Positions 1-6,238 of a DNA stretch of 64,000 nt are shown one piece after another. The stretch lies in assembly GCA_964252035.1 (NCBI GenBank), contig OZ176214.1; one strand, given 5' to 3'. Below the pieces are notes generated by a model. The model saw only the letters and a list, made by a program, of their open reading frames with translations. It was not told where the DNA came from and made no database searches. The DNA comes from Podarcis erhardii. Its lineage: Eukaryota. Each line of letters starts with the position of its first letter. The stretch's first letter is position 1. The position numbers and the translations under genes were made by a program.

Positions 1-228
1 TGCACTGAGTGCGTTTTTGCATTGCACGGAGTGTGTAGTTGCATTGAACGGAGTTTGTAGTTGCATTGCATGGAGTGTAGCTGCATTGCATGGAGCGTAG
101 TTGCATTGCTTGAAGTGCATTTTTGCATTGCACGGAGTGTGTAGTTGTGTTGCATGGAGTGTAGTTGCATTGCATGGAGTGTGTGTGTGCTGCACGGAGT
201 GTGTTTTTTGCATTACACAGAGTGTGTG
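1..228. repeat. Minisatellite, about 20-22 bp unit (TTGCATTGCAYGGAGTGT(GT)AG), running off the window start
   Basis: About 9-10 degenerate units visible directly. Confidence 0.85.
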
Positions 229-399
229 TGTCGGAAAAGGAAGCTGGCTTGGCGGCAGCTTTGTCGGAACTTCTTTAGGGGTTCTGGCCAGCGTCGGCCC
301 TGTAAATTTACGTATTATGATGGCAGCACAAGATGCCCCCTGCCCAAGAGGGGGCTGGAAGCTGGCATGCAATACCTCAATACCTTTTGCCATATTCCC

Positions 400-1260
400 A
401 TTTTATTTGGGATCCAGATGGATATCGTTGCTAAAACATGCCACTTGCCTATGGAGAAGCTGTCTGCCTTGAAGGAAGTTATTTTGTAATACTTCCTCTG
501 TAGCAAGTGATTCTTCATCAGATCCGATCTTGCTGGGTCACTTAATTAATCTTGCATGCAGAGTGGTTGCCCCAGGCCGCCCCTTCCCTTTCCACTAGGC
601 CAGGCTGCCTGCGGCCTGAGGTCCCCTTAACTTTCTCATGCAATGGTTGCAATTCCTAAATGTCGAGGTCCCCTTGCCTTTCTCATGCAATGGGATCTCA
701 TGCAATGGTTGCAATTCCTAAATGTATGCAATAGTAGTTGGCCATGGCAGGATACCTGGAACTTGCACAGGGATTTTCAGGTTCATGCTGATGCTGCTGG
801 ATCTTTGCCCTTTGGGTTTTTTATTTATTTATTTTATTTTTTTTATTTATTTATTTATTTATTTAATTTTATTTTATTTTATTTTATTTTATTTTAGGAG
901 CTGCTGGTGTGCAAAGCCATGGCCTCAAGCCCGTGTGGTGAGGCAATCATGTGACCTAACTTTTCTTGAGTTTTCCCCATTGTAGTAGCAGTTCACATGT
1001 GGCCCGAGGAGTTCAGTGAACATCGGATCTGCTTTTGGTCTGATAACCAGGTAGTGGTGAGCGTCTTGGCAAAACGGTCCTCACGCTCTAGCTGAGTCTC
1101 CGCCCCTCCGCTCACGCTTTCGAGCTGCGCCGCTTAAGGTTTAATATTGTGCTTTCTGCTCCTGATTACGGGATCCTCTAATGATGTCACTGTCACTCTA
1201 TCCCATTTTCAGATGGAGCGGTTCAGATCCTGGGCTCCAGACACTCAGCTACTGCCAGAC
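400..1260 (+). pseudogene. Decayed DIRS/Ngaro RT C-terminus and RNase H
   Basis: Fragments LFGIQMDIVAKTCHLPMEKL, LLGHLINLACRVVAPGRPF, FQVHADAAGSLPFG, DLTFLEFSP.VVAVHMW..FWSDNQVVV and LSHFQMERFRSWAP in shifting frames; stops, deletions and a (TTTA)n insertion. Confidence 0.88.
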
Positions 1261-1379
1261 TTTTCCAGACCACCTGTGGCATTTTGGCAACAATTAGTAA
1301 TTACAGAGAGCAGCAGCTTCCATTTCCCCTTCTGCTTTTAGCTCTTATGGGAAGGCCTGGATGGATTTCTTAGCCTTAA

Positions 1380-2160
1380 GCTGGCAGCCCTTGGCCATTC
1401 AGATGAACTGGCCCCCATCCTCTGAGCAGATCCTGCAGTATTTGGTCCACCTGCTGCAGATTGGGCGTGCTGTTAGAACTATAAGAATTCAGTCCGCTGC
1501 AATGTCTGTTATACTGAAGCTTTATTTTTCAGAGACCCTTGTATAAAGTTTGTTGTGTGCAGGGCCTTGGAAGGTTGGAATAGGCTCCAACCTCATAGGA
1601 CACTGGGCAGGAAGTCGGTCAATTTTACCAATGCAGTATCTCCAACAAGTTAAAACTTATCTGCTGGTAAAAGATCAAGGCGAGACTCCTTTCAGTATTC
1701 CATTGCATTTTGGTGCACTGAGGGTTGGGGAAATGGTTGTTGGAGCTAGCACGGGGCTGAGAGTCTGGAGGCTTATTGCTTCAGGACTTTTCCTTATCTG
1801 CTTTGGAGCTTGTCATTAGAGTCGGGAACTCTAAAACAGACTTAGTGGGCAGGAGTGCCACAATCTGGCTTCCCGTCACAGGTAAGGAGGGCCCTTGCCC
1901 AGTTATGGATACCAGAAATTTGGCTTTTCATTCCCCTGGGGGCTGGCCCGCTCCTAGTGCGTAAAAATGGGTTCCTGTTAGCCAGGCATCAATGTGCTTA
2001 CGTCGTGCACCAGTTATTACGGCCTGCGGCTTGCCTACCGCTGAACACGCCTCATTCCTTCCAAATAGGGCTGCTGCAAAGGCTGCACACTGGGGGCCTG
2101 TCAGTAGACAGGATTGTGAAATCATTGAATGTCTGATGCTGAGAAGGGTTATATCAGGAA
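1380..2160 (+). pseudogene. Decayed tyrosine recombinase ORF
   Basis: WPPSSEQILQYLVHL (N-terminal domain), FGALRVGEMV (Arg motif), SKTDLVGR (Lys), PHSFQIG (HxxR with R to Q), SDAEKGYIR (catalytic Tyr region); several frameshifts. Confidence 0.88.
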
Positions 2161-2214
2161 GCGTCACAATGATGTCTGTGCTGATGCTTGTCTGTTATTT
2201 CCTTTTTTCATAGG

Positions 2215-2520
2215 AACAGCTGTGCACATTTGGGCCACAGCATTGTACGCTGGGCTGGCAAGCGCGCTGACGAGTCTGGACTGGGCGCCATCTCAGTCTT
2301 CCTGCCCATGTGAACATATACTGGATGTCCAGATGGGGAATGCTTTGGGAGGAGATCCTTCCTTTGGCGGTCGAGTGTGACCTGTGCTGGTCCTCCCGCA
2401 GTGCTGGTGGTACAGCTGGACAAGAATGATTTGCCATCTTTCTCCAGCATAAGTTTGCATTCCTGCATGCAAGAGGGCTTGGTTCGAGTTGATGGCAGCT
2501 CTCCCTGGACTCAAAATAAT
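2215..2520 (+). pseudogene. SGNH/GDSL hydrolase-like segment 1 (N-terminal half, decayed)
   Basis: GHSIVRWAG (block I), W...GMLWEE, GPPAVLVVQLDKNDL (block III GxND-like); frameshifted. Confidence 0.75.
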
Positions 2521-2521
2521 T

Positions 2522-2707
2522 AAAGGCATTGGTTCAAGGTGATCTGGAGGGGGGGTTGGAGCACCTGTCCCCTCCAACCGCTAGATGCGGTAGCTTTGGA
2601 ATTCATTGCTCCCCCACAATGTTTGCTTGTACTGATGATATGGTGGGGCCCAGTCGTCAGTGCTGCCCTGCTGAGGTCAGGTGCAGCTAGTCGGGAACCA
2701 ATGCCTA
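2522..2707 (+). repeat. Diverged, internally shortened copy of the Ngaro B repeat (B')
   Basis: Colinear matches to B1: aggcattggtt, tggagggg..cccctcca, ggaattc, gtcagtgctg, (c/g)ctagtc/atagtc, aaccaatgccta. Confidence 0.72.
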
Positions 2708-2724
2708 GACAAACTACCACCGTT

Positions 2725-3113
2725 TTGGCCCTCCTTCGGCGATTGTGGTGCAGCTTGAGGAGAATGATATGGCTTCCTCTTCCTGCTATGAGCTGCGTGC
2801 GGCCATTTTACAGGACCTGAGGGAACTGGCGGCACTGGTGCCGACCGGTAGGTTAATTTGGTCACAGCTGCTTCAACGACGCACTTGGAGGGGTAGCCCT
2901 TGCCCAGCTGCCACCGAACGAGTGAGGAAGCGGATTAACTCCACTGCGAGTAAGCTGGTGGTCGATTTGGGCGGGTGCGTGATCCCTCACCCTCTTATTT
3001 CATTCCGGGCGGTTGAATTTTATAGGGATGACGGGGTTCATCTCTCGCCAGTTGGGAATGATGTTTGGTTGGATGCGATGGTGTCCAGGCTGAGGGTGTG
3101 GCTTAATTTGTGA
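2725..3113 (+). pseudogene. SGNH hydrolase-like segment 2 (C-terminal two-thirds, open frame to TGA at 3113)
   Basis: GPPSAIVVQLEENDM...IWSQLLQRRTWRG...RKRIN...YRDDGVHLSPVGNDVWL, containing the DxxH catalytic motif; lacks block I. Confidence 0.8.
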
Positions 3114-3142
3114 GTGGTTGGCGGCGAGCGTAAGGGCTCGAA

Positions 3143-3566
3143 TGGCGGTTAGGCATTGGTTAAAATTGGTTGGTGGAGGGGTATGGATTGGCTGTGCCTG
3201 CCCCTCCAATGCTGCTGCTGACGGGTATTCCGTTAAAGGAATTCTGAAGCTTACCATCCCCTTTGTCCAAACCCTGACGGCAGGGTGCGGGCCGCGTAAG
3301 CTTCAAGGAGCATGCGCGGAGTAGCTGAGGGCCTGTGACGCAGCTCCAGCTGACTCTGTCCCGTGTTCCTCCGGGACTGACTAGGGAGTCAGTGCTGTCC
3401 CCCATGGCGGGGGGTGACAGATAGTCATAACCAATGCCTAAGCAACCACTCTCAATTTGTATGCAAATAAAGTTGTGGCCAAAATTATGCCAAAAACCTT
3501 AAACAAAAATTACGTGTGATGTGTGAGTTATTGGGGAAGGGGTTTTGGGGGACCTCAACACGCAAA
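3143..3566 (+). repeat. Ngaro split direct repeat B1 (424 bp)
   Basis: No difference from 3945-4368 seen on reading (offset 802; the ORF-track peptides at 3160 and 3962 are identical); contains ATGCAAATAAAGTTGTGGCC (polyA signal). Confidence 0.93.
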
Positions 3567-3944
3567 GCGTGTTCACATAAAAGAGAGCACGTGTTGCGGT
3601 TGGGGCCGAACAAAACCCATTTTAGTGGCTAGGCCATAGATGGCTAGAGGCCTGGGAACAGATAGGTGGATGTTGTTACTGGGGCAAATTTGATGTTGCC
3701 AATTTAGGGGTGGGGTCAATGGCTTTATAAGCAGGGTCCACAGCTTTCTCTTTCTCTTTTGCTGTGGACACCGGATCTCCCGCCCGCCCTCCCTTGTTTG
3801 GGCTTGCGCCTTGACCTTGCTTTGCCTGTCATAGGGTCGCTCGCATTGTTGCGAGGGCCCAGTAGGAATTTTTCCAATCGGCTGATTAGTGCGTGCCTTT
3901 TGGGTTTTGCCTACTGCTTAGCAAATCGTCACAACTTGTAAGGT
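3567..3944 (+). repeat. Ngaro split direct repeat A2 (378 bp), with TATA-like TTTATAAG at 3724-3731
   Basis: Lies between B1 and B2 as in the A1...B1-A2-B2 architecture; its A1 twin is predicted left of the window. Confidence 0.75.
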
Positions 3945-4368
3945 TGGCGGTTAGGCATTGGTTAAAATTGGTTGGTGGAGGGGTATGGATTGGCTGTGCC
4001 TGCCCCTCCAATGCTGCTGCTGACGGGTATTCCGTTAAAGGAATTCTGAAGCTTACCATCCCCTTTGTCCAAACCCTGACGGCAGGGTGCGGGCCGCGTA
4101 AGCTTCAAGGAGCATGCGCGGAGTAGCTGAGGGCCTGTGACGCAGCTCCAGCTGACTCTGTCCCGTGTTCCTCCGGGACTGACTAGGGAGTCAGTGCTGT
4201 CCCCCATGGCGGGGGGTGACAGATAGTCATAACCAATGCCTAAGCAACCACTCTCAATTTGTATGCAAATAAAGTTGTGGCCAAAATTATGCCAAAAACC
4301 TTAAACAAAAATTACGTGTGATGTGTGAGTTATTGGGGAAGGGGTTTTGGGGGACCTCAACACGCAAA
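3945..4368 (+). repeat. Ngaro split direct repeat B2 (424 bp), right terminus
   Basis: Second copy of B; ends AACACGCAAA, followed by hAT sequence. Confidence 0.93.
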
Positions 4369-5094
4369 TAGCCTCAAGATTGCTTCCACATTAGGAAAGG
4401 CCATCTGAATTTTTTCCTTGTATATAATTTGATAAAGGTCTGTATGAGGCAGAGAGTGCTCTGCTGTAAGCCTATGTCTTTGTCTCATGTACAGATGAAA
4501 GTGCAAAGTTCATCATGAAGTTTGAGGTCAATATCTTCTGGATATGCTTCCATCAACAGTTCAACACCTTGCTGAATTTCTTGCTTAGATGATGTCAGAT
4601 TAGCAAGAATGGAAAACAATTGTGCAACATCACTGTACACATTACTTCTTCTTTTTAAAATGGCTTCAAGTGCATCTAATATAGGAATTAAGGATTTTAT
4701 CTTAAACTTATCTCTTGTTTTGTAGCTGACATTTGGCAAGGTGGCTTTTGCTTGTTTCTCAAGCTCATCAAAATTTTCTCTAGTTTTCCTTAAAAAATCC
4801 AGAAGTGAACTGTACAAACTTGCACAAGAACTCAATAACAGGTCTGATTTCTGAAGGGCTTTGCTGACCTTGTGAAAATGACCTAGCACATGGGTCAAAA
4901 AATAGGGCTCCACTGGCTGGCCCTGAGTCTCATAGTTGCTGGGCCTGAGCTCCCCTGCCCTTGCATGAAGTCTTGGGTTTGCAATTTTGGGAGAGGGCAA
5001 ACTGCCTGCTGGGGGGTAGGTGAACTGGGGAGGCCCCCTAGATTTAGAGGCCCTAGGCTTCATCCTACTTAGCCCATACATAAATCCAGCACTG
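4369..5094 (-). mobile_element. Internally deleted hAT DNA transposon (5' terminus plus transposase C-terminus), interrupted by the Ngaro element
   Basis: Minus-strand terminus CAGTGCTGGATTTA at 5094; about 200 bp later ...KVSKALQKSDLLL...RDKFKIKSLIPILDAL...YPEDIDLKLHDEL; then, after frameshifts, YQIIYKEKIQMAFPNVEAILRLF (start of the hATC dimerization motif), cut at 4368. Confidence 0.82.
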
Positions 5095-5494
5095 GCACCC
5101 ATCTTGATTTGCTTGCAGGAAGCGTCTGTGGAAGTTAGATTATATCCCATCTAGATCAAGCACCCATTCTGATTTGTTTGCCTTGTGAATATATGACAAA
5201 GGACATCCTGACTTGCTTGCAGGGTGTTTATAGGTCTTCCTATTACTTGTTCACTCCACGCTTTCTAATACATTTGTCTCACTTTCTAAACTGCAAAAAG
5301 TCAGATTCTTTTTTTTTAAAAGTGGTTTTGTTTCGCTAGGGTAACAAAGCCTTTAACTGTGGAAATCTAAAGTTCTGATACAGTACGTGCTTAAATTTCG
5401 CCCACAAAATAGTGACAATGTGGAAGCACCCTTTATCGAGACATTGGCAAGCGAAGTTAATTTGCTTGATGTGCTAATTCATATAAGCACAGAA

Positions 5495-5945
5495 GAAGAG
5501 CCTGCTGGATCTCCTCAATGACCCATCATCCTGTTCTCACAGTGACCAGCGAAGCATGCAATCAGGATTCAAGCACAAGAGCACCCTCCCCTGCTGTGAT
5601 TTCCAGCAACTGGTATTCAGACACATTACTGCCTTCAGCTGTGGCATCTCCACTACTGCCAGTAGCCATTGATAACCTTCTCCTCCATGAATTTGGCTAA
5701 TCCTTTTTTTTTAAAAATCATCCAAGATGGTGGCCACCACTTCTTTCTGTGGAAGCAAGTTCCATAGTTCAACTATGTGCTACATGGAGAAGTACTTGCT
5801 TTTGTCATTCCTGAATTTCCCAACATTTGGCTTCATTGGAAGTCCACAAGTTCTAGTGTAACAAGACAGGGAGAAAAACATTTCTCTAGCCACTTTCTCC
5901 ATGGCATGCATAATTTTATAAATGAGGGCTGCCATACATCCAGAT
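5495..5945 (-). mobile_element. CR1 LINE 3' fragment, old
   Basis: Recognisable squamate CR1 3' sequence (gttccatagttcaactatgtgct...aagtact; tggccaccact; ctgttctcacagtg). Confidence 0.65.
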
Positions 5946-6238
5946 TTTCACTTTTTGAAATATGGCAACCCTATATACTGTAAACATCTATCACAATCAT
6001 TTTGCTTTATGTTCCAGAATGATCAGATCCAAACGTCTCAGAGACAATGGTACAATTAATCCAATTAGTAAATTGAGGATGCAACCCTACGTACACATTG
6101 AAACCAGTGGGACAGACTGAAGACATAAAGTTCTAGGCTCTGCGTATTGAGTGTGTGTGTGTGTGTATGTGTGCGTAGGAGAACGTATTTCTTCACAACT
6201 AAGTTTTTGTGAAAAATCAAAGAAGGTATTTGACTTAC

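What the first reader, a model, noticed from the sequence alone, without database searches (positions are those of the whole stretch)
240..4368. Dead coding body but apparently identical terminal repeats: a recently mobilised or chimeric Ngaro element
Seen: RT, RNaseH and YR carry many frameshifts, stops, deletions and a microsatellite, yet B1 and B2 (424 bp each) show no difference on reading and 2725-3113 is an open frame. Established: split direct repeats are re-copied at each replication cycle, so identity indicates recent insertion. Inference: either a non-autonomous derivative moved in trans by an active relative, or a young Ngaro 3' module joined to an old related element near 2708 (template switch or homology-driven capture). 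Either way, an active YR retrotransposon family is implied in this lineage.
Basis: partly seen in the sequence, partly recalled or inferred. Interest (0 to 1): 0.75.

Follow-up and report, generated by a model that had tools for sequence, protein, structure and literature searches.

The report
Old Ngaro body, young Ngaro tail
A lizard jumping gene of the tyrosine-recombinase (Ngaro) kind turns out to be two elements of different age fused end to end, so its perfectly identical tail repeats date only the young tail; this is a well-documented but fairly ordinary rearrangement.

Summary
B1 (3143-3566) and B2 (3945-4368) are 424 bp and 100% identical. 2709-3110 is stop-free. The body at 240-2520 is broken by many frameshifts, stops and a microsatellite.

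The locus is an Ngaro-type element: reverse transcriptase (RT) end, tyrosine recombinase (YR), SGNH hydrolase, then B1-A2-B2. It is a composite of two parts.

- **Old part:** it carries its own hydrolase N-half (2230 to about 2520) and its own diverged B repeat, B' (2524-2722).
- **Junction:** at 2722-2730 the old part abuts the hydrolase C-half of another Ngaro lineage.
- **Young part:** 80% identical to intact homologues with no break, against about 35% for the old half. CpG observed/expected is 0.62-0.83 against 0.37.

The identical B repeats therefore date only the 1.64-kb tail, to under about 2-7 My at assumed rates.

A short-read contig matches 2693-3058 exactly and crosses the junction. 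It is unbranched and about 4 times as deep as the exact flank contigs. That hints the composite exists in 2-4 copies, possibly copied in trans, but contig depth is a weak measure.

A1 and the 5' end are not in the window. This is a known kind of element, of moderate interest.

The parts
1..235 (.). Minisatellite with a 20-22 bp unit abutting the truncated RT. It is unclear whether it belongs to the element family.
   Evidence: TRF. High contig depth in all four runs; one contig of run X13 stops matching at 238.
240..744 (+). C-terminal part of the reverse transcriptase and its connection region, broken. The 5' part of the RT, gag and A1 are absent from the window.
   Evidence: P0016 carries Pfam RVT_1 at residues 3-87. 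Its residues 65-185 align to 353-744 with score 143 against about 35 for shuffles, with 3 frame changes and 2 stops.
745..1265 (+). Presumed RNase H region, broken and interrupted by the microsatellite at 817-896.
   Evidence: Motifs read by eye. The Atlas gives only leads (RVT_3, RT_RNaseH, scores 0.81-0.84). Pfam finds nothing on the 41-aa piece. Not firmly tested.
1285..2180 (+). Tyrosine recombinase (SAM-like N-domain and catalytic domain), broken by 7-11 frame changes and 1-2 stops.
   Evidence: HMMER hits down to E 1e-17 for 1301-1543. The hits carry Phage_int_SAM_4 and Phage_integrase below Pfam's cut-off. tblastn E 1e-30 to 1e-47. Break counts.
2230..2520 (+). N-terminal half of the old element's SGNH hydrolase, through the GxND block. 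It is broken and lacks its C-terminal part.
   Evidence: tblastn to P0002-P0005 gives 34-36% identity, E 1e-9 to 1e-11. P0020 (Lipase_GDSL_2) aligns at 2233-2511. 2389-2481 aligns to 2727-2819 at 66% nucleotide identity, above all shuffles.
2524..2722 (+). B', the old element's own diverged, shortened B repeat, cut short at its 3' side.
   Evidence: 2524-2688 aligns to B1 3151-3345 at 77% with many indels, score 52 against a shuffle maximum of 35. Contigs in X1 and X13 join 2714 to 3466, so other copies continue into the B tail.
2723..2730 (+). Junction between the two elements: TTTT, then GGCC where hydrolase homology begins. A GGCC overlap is possible.
   Evidence: tblastn starts at 2727. 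An X16 contig matches from 2727 and has ordinary hydrolase coding sequence before it. The exact X1 contig 2693-3058 bridges 2726/2727 with 34 letters on the left. Sequence read.
2727..3113 (+). Intact C-terminal half of the SGNH hydrolase of a younger Ngaro lineage, with its stop codon.
   Evidence: 128 codons, 80% identical to P0002, no gap, no stop, no frame change. Pfam Lipase_GDSL E 0.007, below the cut-off. CpG observed/expected 0.83.
3143..3566 (+). B1 repeat, with AATAAA at 3466-3471. It folds into a closed multi-branch structure.
   Evidence: Fold -169.5 kcal/mol, z -3.7.
3567..3944 (+). A2 repeat, with TATAAG at 3726. No A1 partner exists in the window.
   Evidence: Self-BLAST finds no second copy. 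Motif.
3945..4368 (+). B2 repeat, identical to B1, with AATAAA at 4268-4273. It marks the 3' end of the element.
3557..3573 (.). Palindrome AACACGC-AAA-GCGTGTT at the B1/A2 boundary. B2 ends in the same AACACGCAAA before the flank.

Best explanation
The stretch 240-4368 is a composite of two Ngaro-type tyrosine-recombinase retrotransposons, not one decayed element.

The left part (240-2722) is a decayed, 5'-truncated copy of an abundant older family. It holds the RT end, presumed RNase H, recombinase, the hydrolase N-half and that family's own B-type repeat (B').

At 2722-2730 it is joined, without extended homology, to the last 1.64 kb of a younger, rarer Ngaro lineage. That tail holds the intact hydrolase C-half and the canonical 3' split repeats B1-A2-B2.

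The perfect B1/B2 identity therefore dates only the tail, or the last event that copied the composite. It means under about 0.35% divergence per copy, roughly 2-7 My at assumed rates of 0.5-2e-9 per site per year.

Shown: the anatomy, the duplicated hydrolase segment, B', the junction, and the contrast in integrity and CpG.

Inferred: how the join arose. Either reverse transcriptase switched templates between two co-packaged RNAs, or a DNA deletion joined two adjacent elements. I lean at about 40% to the view that the composite is itself a non-autonomous element copied recently by Ngaro proteins supplied in trans, which would also have renewed B1 and B2.
For: - **Repeats:** B1 and B2 are 424/424 identical.
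- **Duplicated hydrolase segment:** 2230-2571 and 2727-3110 both align to the same homologues, covering overlapping residues (P0002 residues 32-145 and 86-213), at 35% and 80% identity. Nucleotide identity between the overlapping segments is 66%.
- **B':** 2524-2688 aligns to B1 at 77% with many indels, above all shuffles. Other copies of B' run on into a B tail, seen as the joint 2714 to 3466 in X1 and X13.
- **Integrity:** 20 breaks in 1,395 aligned bases of the body against 0 in 384 of the tail, P about 0.004.
- **CpG observed/expected:** 0.37 in the body and 0.27 in B', against 0.83 in the tail's coding part and 0.53-0.58 in B and A2; the flank is 0.21.
- **Junction is real:** an exact contig of run X1 covers 2693-3058.
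- **Family assignment:** the RT-end, YR, SGNH order and the B1-A2-B2 repeats match the published Ngaro layout (PMC9210276).
- **Trans-copying:** the exact junction contig has depth 200 against 51-53 for the exact flank contigs and is not broken at 2727. The A and B ends are shared with very abundant short relatives. [quoted passage not shown]
Against: - The 5' end, and any A1, lies outside the window, so whether the composite is a complete mobile unit cannot be seen.
- All read evidence comes from Logan contigs. The tool warns that depth is not copy number and that rare variants are dropped.
- Part of the low identity of the old half may reflect a different lineage rather than age.
- RNase H was not confirmed by any tool.
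- No contig shown bridges B2 and the flank, or spans B1-A2-B2.
- Gene conversion between B1 and B2 cannot be excluded. It is not needed, because the unique part of the tail also looks young.
Confidence: 0.8

Rival explanations
1. The composite was formed in place and is unique to this locus. A young Ngaro inserted next to or into an old resident copy. A later deletion of several kb then removed the old A2'-B2' and the young element's A1, gag, RT, RNase H, recombinase and hydrolase N-half. The composite never moved.
For: The join lacks extended homology, at most a 4-nt GGCC overlap, as expected of end joining. DIRS-type elements are known to cluster. The depth of a single contig is a weak guide to copy number (tool warning).
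Against: The exact junction contig is about 4 times as deep as the exact flank contigs of the same run. It is also unbroken at 2727, although any close intact relative in that genome should create a branch there. No remnant of an old A2' or B2' lies downstream of 4368.
Confidence: 0.35
2. The junction is multi-copy because a genomic segment holding the composite was duplicated, as a segmental or tandem duplication, rather than retrotransposed.
For: Depth 200 against about 50 for the exact contig fits any kind of copying.
Against: Exact flank contigs at 5045-5690, only 0.7-1.3 kb past the element's end, are at single depth. Each duplication would therefore have to end close to the element boundary.
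Confidence: 0.12
3. This is one element of uniform age, and B1 and B2 were made identical by gene conversion between nearby direct repeats.
For: The 424-bp direct repeats lie only 378 bp apart, so they are good substrates for conversion.
Against: Conversion does not explain the intact 128-codon frame or the high CpG in the non-repeated part of the tail. It also does not explain the second, overlapping hydrolase segment or the separate B' repeat.
Confidence: 0.04
4. This is an assembly artefact: a mis-join at about 2725 or an artificial duplication of B.
For: The region is highly repetitive. Short-read contigs cannot span a 424-bp repeat, so the B1-A2-B2 order was not checked independently.
Against: A short-read contig of a public run reproduces 2693-3058 exactly across the junction, though that run may be the sample the window was assembled from. 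B1-A2-B2 with identical repeats is the canonical Ngaro 3' end, for example DIRS-53_XT (PMC9210276).
Confidence: 0.05

Closest known systems
Ngaro-like retrotransposons with an SGNH hydrolase ORF, such as Xenopus tropicalis DIRS-53_XT (described in PMC9210276) and the Ngaro group of Goodwin and Poulter 2004 (the latter cited from that paper and my own knowledge)
   Same: The domain order is RT/RH, then tyrosine recombinase, then SGNH hydrolase. There is no room for a methyltransferase between the RNase H region and the recombinase. The 3' end is B1-A2-B2 with 100% identical B copies.
   Different: Here the 5' end (A1, gag, most of the RT) is missing and the body is decayed. Two lineages are fused, so the hydrolase GxND region occurs twice and an extra B-type repeat sits between the halves. 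B is 424 bp and A is 378 bp, against 152 and 236 bp in DIRS-53_XT.
Non-autonomous derivatives of retroelements copied in trans, such as the coding-deficient DIRS-1 construct mobilised by endogenous proteins (PMC7192593) and plant LARD/TRIM elements (own knowledge)
   Same: A dead or missing coding interior is combined with well-kept terminal repeats. Very abundant short relatives share the A and B ends here.
   Different: Mobility of this composite is not shown, and its 5' terminus is unseen. The interior is a decayed older element plus a fragment of a younger one, not a simple deletion derivative.
Recombinant retroviruses and LTR retrotransposons made by template switching of reverse transcriptase between co-packaged RNAs (own knowledge)
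   Same: A junction joins two related elements of one superfamily in the same orientation, 3' part from one and 5' part from the other.
   Different: The junction here is non-homologous (B tail to mid-hydrolase). Nothing is known about RNA packaging or strand transfer in Ngaro elements. A DNA-level deletion explains the join equally well.

Membership tests
Ngaro (tyrosine-recombinase retrotransposon, DIRS order) | Reverse transcriptase domain | tested here: met
   Only the C-terminal part is present. P0016 (Pfam RVT_1 E 9e-7, 29.3 bits against a cut-off of 29.6) aligns at 353-744, score 143 against about 35 for shuffles.
Ngaro (tyrosine-recombinase retrotransposon, DIRS order) | RNase H domain after the RT | tested here: inconclusive
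   Motifs read by eye at about 745-1265. The Atlas gives leads only. Pfam finds nothing on the 41-aa piece. None of the retrieved proteins carried an RNase H to align.
Ngaro (tyrosine-recombinase retrotransposon, DIRS order) | Tyrosine recombinase downstream of RT/RH, on the same strand | tested here: met
   1285-2127 aligns at 51-53% identity to P0008 and P0017. The hits carry Phage_int_SAM_4 and Phage_integrase matches, below Pfam's cut-offs.
Ngaro (tyrosine-recombinase retrotransposon, DIRS order) | No methyltransferase domain (distinguishes Ngaro from DIRS1-like and PAT-like elements) | tested here: met
   The recombinase alignment starts at 1285 (1188 with P0008), directly after the RNase H region. 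The hydrolase follows the recombinase at 2230. No Pfam methyltransferase match appears on any piece. This rests on spacing and on absence of a match, which is a weak test.
Ngaro (tyrosine-recombinase retrotransposon, DIRS order) | Split direct repeats: A1 at the 5' end and B1-A2-B2 at the 3' end, with A1 = A2 and B1 = B2 | tested here: inconclusive
   B1-A2-B2 is present and B1 = B2 over 424 bp. No A1 is in the window, because the 5' end is truncated or lies outside it.
Ngaro subgroup with a hydrolase ORF | SGNH/GDSL hydrolase ORF after the recombinase | tested here: met
   2727-3110 is 54-81% identical to P0001-P0006. Pfam Lipase_GDSL E 0.007, below the cut-off. P0020 carries Lipase_GDSL_2 at E 7e-7 (30.4 bits, below the cut-off of 32.9) and aligns at 2721-3101 and 2233-2511.
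Non-autonomous Ngaro derivative mobilised in trans | Several copies sharing the same internal junction but lying at different genomic sites, each with complete termini | tested here: inconclusive
   The exact junction contig is unbranched and at depth 200 against 51-53 for the flank contigs. That is suggestive only. Flanks of other copies and the 5' terminus could not be examined.

The most novel reading that the evidence does not exclude
The composite is a recombinant, non-autonomous Ngaro: a dead body of one lineage carrying the 3' repeat module of another. It has been retrotransposed within the last few million years by proteins supplied in trans. That would show the terminal repeat modules, not the coding interior, are what the Ngaro machinery needs in cis, and that Ngaro lineages exchange these modules.
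Probability: 0.35. Interest if true: 0.55.

Novelty: new member of a known kind. Interest (0 to 1): 0.35.

Why it matters
Ngaro elements are among the least understood retrotransposons. Their replication model, including how the split repeats are renewed, is untested.

This locus shows that identity of the terminal repeats cannot be used to date a whole Ngaro copy without first checking that the copy is one element.

It also gives a concrete, checkable junction (2722-2730). If that junction is found at several sites, it would be natural evidence for module exchange and trans-mobilisation in a tyrosine-recombinase retrotransposon of an amniote. If it is found at this locus only, this is an ordinary rearranged transposon copy.

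Tried and rejected
The DNA around the homologous hydrolase proteins could not be fetched, so related B/A repeats from other contigs were not compared.
- **Pfam on single stop-free pieces of the body** found nothing. The word search with the recombinase piece 1846-2133 also found nothing. The full HMMER search was then used.
- **Rfam** has no family for B or A2. The only match was a chance-level miRNA hit.
- **Simple nested insertion** of the young element into the old one is rejected. No remainder of the old 3' end lies downstream of 4368, and the young part lacks its 5' 5-6 kb.
- **Protein alignment running to 2571:** the frameshift-aware alignment extended the old hydrolase into B'. I treat this as over-fitting, because the nucleotides 2524-2688 match B1 far better than they match the hydrolase.
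- **Expression is not shown.** Run X16 is only guessed to be RNA, so its contigs on the body and on B (3177-3445, 2 differences) do not prove transcription.
- **Presence or absence of the insertion in the other organisms** could not be read. No listed contig bridges 4368/4369 or the upstream side.
- **Summed depths** (table 2) were not used as copy numbers.
- **No mended sequence was made.** Broken frames were only counted.
Full report
**1. The observation**

- The repeat search and an exact extension show two 424-bp direct repeats, 3143-3566 and 3945-4368, with no difference. Identity stops sharply on both sides.
- Between the repeats lies a 378-bp segment (3567-3944) that has no second copy anywhere in the 64-kb window.
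- The frame over 2709-3110 is free of stops and ends at the stop at 3111-3113.
- Upstream, all three frames are littered with stops.
- A (TTTA/TTTTA)n microsatellite sits at 817-896, and a 20-22-bp minisatellite fills 1-235.

**2. What the coding remains are**

Pfam on single stop-free pieces gave only a weak GDSL-lipase match for 2709-3110 (E 0.007, below the cut-off).

- **Hydrolase.** A word search with the 2709-3110 piece found six unnamed proteins from public assemblies, 54-81% identical. The longer ones (190-216 aa) are full-length SGNH-type ORFs with GHS, GxND and DGVH blocks.
- **Recombinase.** A word search with a recombinase piece found nothing. I therefore spent the one full HMMER search on 1301-1543, which gave 15 hits, the best at E 1e-17. 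Among the hits, Pfam finds RVT_1, the SAM-like N-domain of phage integrases, Phage_integrase (below cut-off) and Lipase_GDSL_2.
- **Mapping back to the window.** The hits mark the RT end at 353-744, the recombinase at 1285-2127 (51-53% identity) and hydrolase segments at 2233-2511 and 2721-3101.
- **RNase H.** The interval 745-1265 shows RNase H-like motifs by eye. The only tool support is a weak Atlas lead, so I leave it as presumed.

The order RT/RH, recombinase, SGNH hydrolase, then B1-A2-B2 is the published Ngaro layout (PMC9210276; PMC7192593). Notes of this scan say the genome is a lizard's.

**3. The element is a composite**

*Duplicated hydrolase segment.* The same reference hydrolases align twice, over overlapping residues. 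P0002 residues 32-145 align at 2230-2571 at 35% identity with breaks. Residues 86-213 align at 2727-3110 at 80% identity without a gap. The segment around the GxND block is thus present twice. At the nucleotide level, 2389-2481 and 2727-2819 are 66% identical, above all shuffles.

*The B' repeat.* Between the two hydrolase segments, 2524-2688 aligns to B1 (3151-3345) at 77% with many indels, again above all shuffles. Its end (about 2690-2720) resembles the B segment around 3424-3455, including the same inverted ends GGCATTGGTT and AACCAATGCC. This is the old element's own B repeat, as another note of the scan also proposed (s1-263229). Contigs of two runs join 2714 to 3466, so other copies of this B' type continue into a normal B tail.

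*The junction.* In the window, B' is cut short. After 2722 come TTTT, then GGCC, where hydrolase homology starts. A contig of run X16 matches from 2727 and carries ordinary hydrolase coding sequence before that point. The 9-mer at 2722-2730 resembles the 9-mer that follows AATAAA in B (3472-3480). B' might therefore reach 2730 and overlap the hydrolase by GGCC. This is a lead, not a finding.

**4. The two parts differ in state**

| Measure | Old body | Young tail |
|---|---|---|
| Frame changes and stops | 20 in 1,395 aligned bases | 0 in 384 bases |
| CpG observed/expected | 0.37 (B' 0.27) | 0.83 coding, 0.53-0.58 in B and A2 |

At the body's rate, 5.5 breaks would be expected in the tail (P about 0.004; about 0.01 with the more conservative count). 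CpG is 0.21 in the flank and 0.25 over the window.

Zero differences in 2 x 424 bases bounds divergence at about 0.35% per copy (95%). That is roughly 7, 3.5 or 1.8 My at assumed rates of 0.5, 1 or 2e-9 per site per year (the rates are my assumption).

The perfect repeats therefore date the tail, or the last copying of the composite, and not the body.

**5. Evidence from public runs**

All runs are kept as Logan contigs. The tool warns that depth is not copy number and that rare variants are dropped.

*Run X1.*
- One contig matches 2693-3058 exactly and bridges 2726/2727 with 34 letters on the left, so the junction is not peculiar to this assembly.
- Its depth is 200. Exact contigs in the flank (5045-5511, 5508-5690) have depths of 53 and 51.
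- The contig is not broken at 2727. It would be expected to break there if the same genome held a close intact relative with normal upstream sequence.
- The only other contigs on 2800-3058 in X1 are about 13% diverged.

Together these points suggest the tail, in this exact form, occurs only attached to B', in perhaps 2-4 copies. I rate this at about 40%.

*Lineage-specific changes.* The tail lineage differs from all other contigs at 2758 and 2773. There it encodes Glu and Ala, where all six homologues have Gly (the GxND block) and Val. That fits a fragment no longer under selection.

*Other runs.*
- X4, a different organism label, holds a 98% relative of 2761-2983 at depth 534.
- X13 holds only a 14%-diverged copy.

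*Family abundance.* Contigs 2-8% different from the old body occur in all four runs, so that family is abundant and shared among species. The ends of A and B are covered by far more contigs than anything else. They are shared with very abundant short relatives, which agrees with scan notes on ORF-less A/B elements in this genome (not checked by me).

**6. How it probably works**

The following readings from the sequence are inference:
- A2 carries TATAAG at 3726, and B carries AATAAA at 3466 and 4268. This fits a transcript that starts inside A and ends inside B, with the internal B1-A2 supplying the missing ends on copying, as in the published model.
- The B1/A2 boundary is a palindrome, AACACGC-AAA-GCGTGTT. 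B2 meets the flank right after the same AAA. That fits a recombinase site at the circle junction (s1-263203; three-base junction model described in PMC3266345).
- B folds into a closed multi-branch structure (z -3.7).

For the composite, two routes fit the non-homologous join: a template switch of reverse transcriptase from a broken young RNA to the 3' region of an old-family RNA, or a deletion between two adjacent elements. A plain nested insertion does not fit, because no old A2'-B2' follows 4368. If the composite is multi-copy, it was copied after the join, most simply in trans, as shown for DIRS-1 (PMC7192593).

**7. Comparison and verdict**

This is a rearranged member of a known kind: a Ngaro element with a hydrolase ORF.

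- Of the two readings offered, the chimera is supported, with the join placed at 2722-2730. Trans-mobilisation stays open.
- 'Active family' is better put as 'activity within the last few million years'. In run X1 no intact close relative of this tail was seen. Intact Ngaro copies elsewhere in this genome are reported only by unchecked scan notes (s1-217710, s1-232466).

Noticed in passing
window 1-235: A minisatellite with a 20-22 bp unit (consensus near TTGCATTGCATGGAGTGTAG) directly abuts the truncated RT. It is covered by many contigs in all four runs, most in X4. Whether it is part of the old element family or just the flank is open.
   Followed up: partly
window 3920-3963: The A2/B2 boundary has by far the highest contig depth of the stretch, about 1.19 million at 3946 in X1. 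Contigs there leave the window sequence at 3963. A very abundant short relative seems to share the end of A and the first 19 bases of B.
   Followed up: no
window 3259-3400: Run X16 holds a B variant that skips 140 bases (joint 3259 to 3400). It also holds a contig only 2 letters different from 3177-3445, although that organism shares few words with the window overall. B appears strongly conserved across species.
   Followed up: no
window 4380-5150: The 3' flank is itself repeated: contigs at 9-10% divergence appear in several runs. It holds a 221-aa ORF on the minus strand (4485-5150) with no Pfam family. The Ngaro tail appears to sit inside another, unidentified repeat.
   Followed up: partly
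window 5400-6000: A very abundant interspersed repeat, with sharp points where hundreds of contigs leave the window sequence (5634/5661 and 5922/5939). It is probably a short high-copy element.
   Followed up: no
window 240-2600: Summed contig depth on the old body is several times higher in X4 than in X1 and X13. This hints that the old family is more abundant in that organism. It rests on depth only, so it is weak.
   Followed up: no
window 3116-3124 and 3941-3949: The 9-mer GGTTGGCGG that spans the A2/B2 boundary also occurs 19 bases upstream of B1, just after the hydrolase stop codon. It may be chance or part of the repeat-renewal signal.
   Followed up: no
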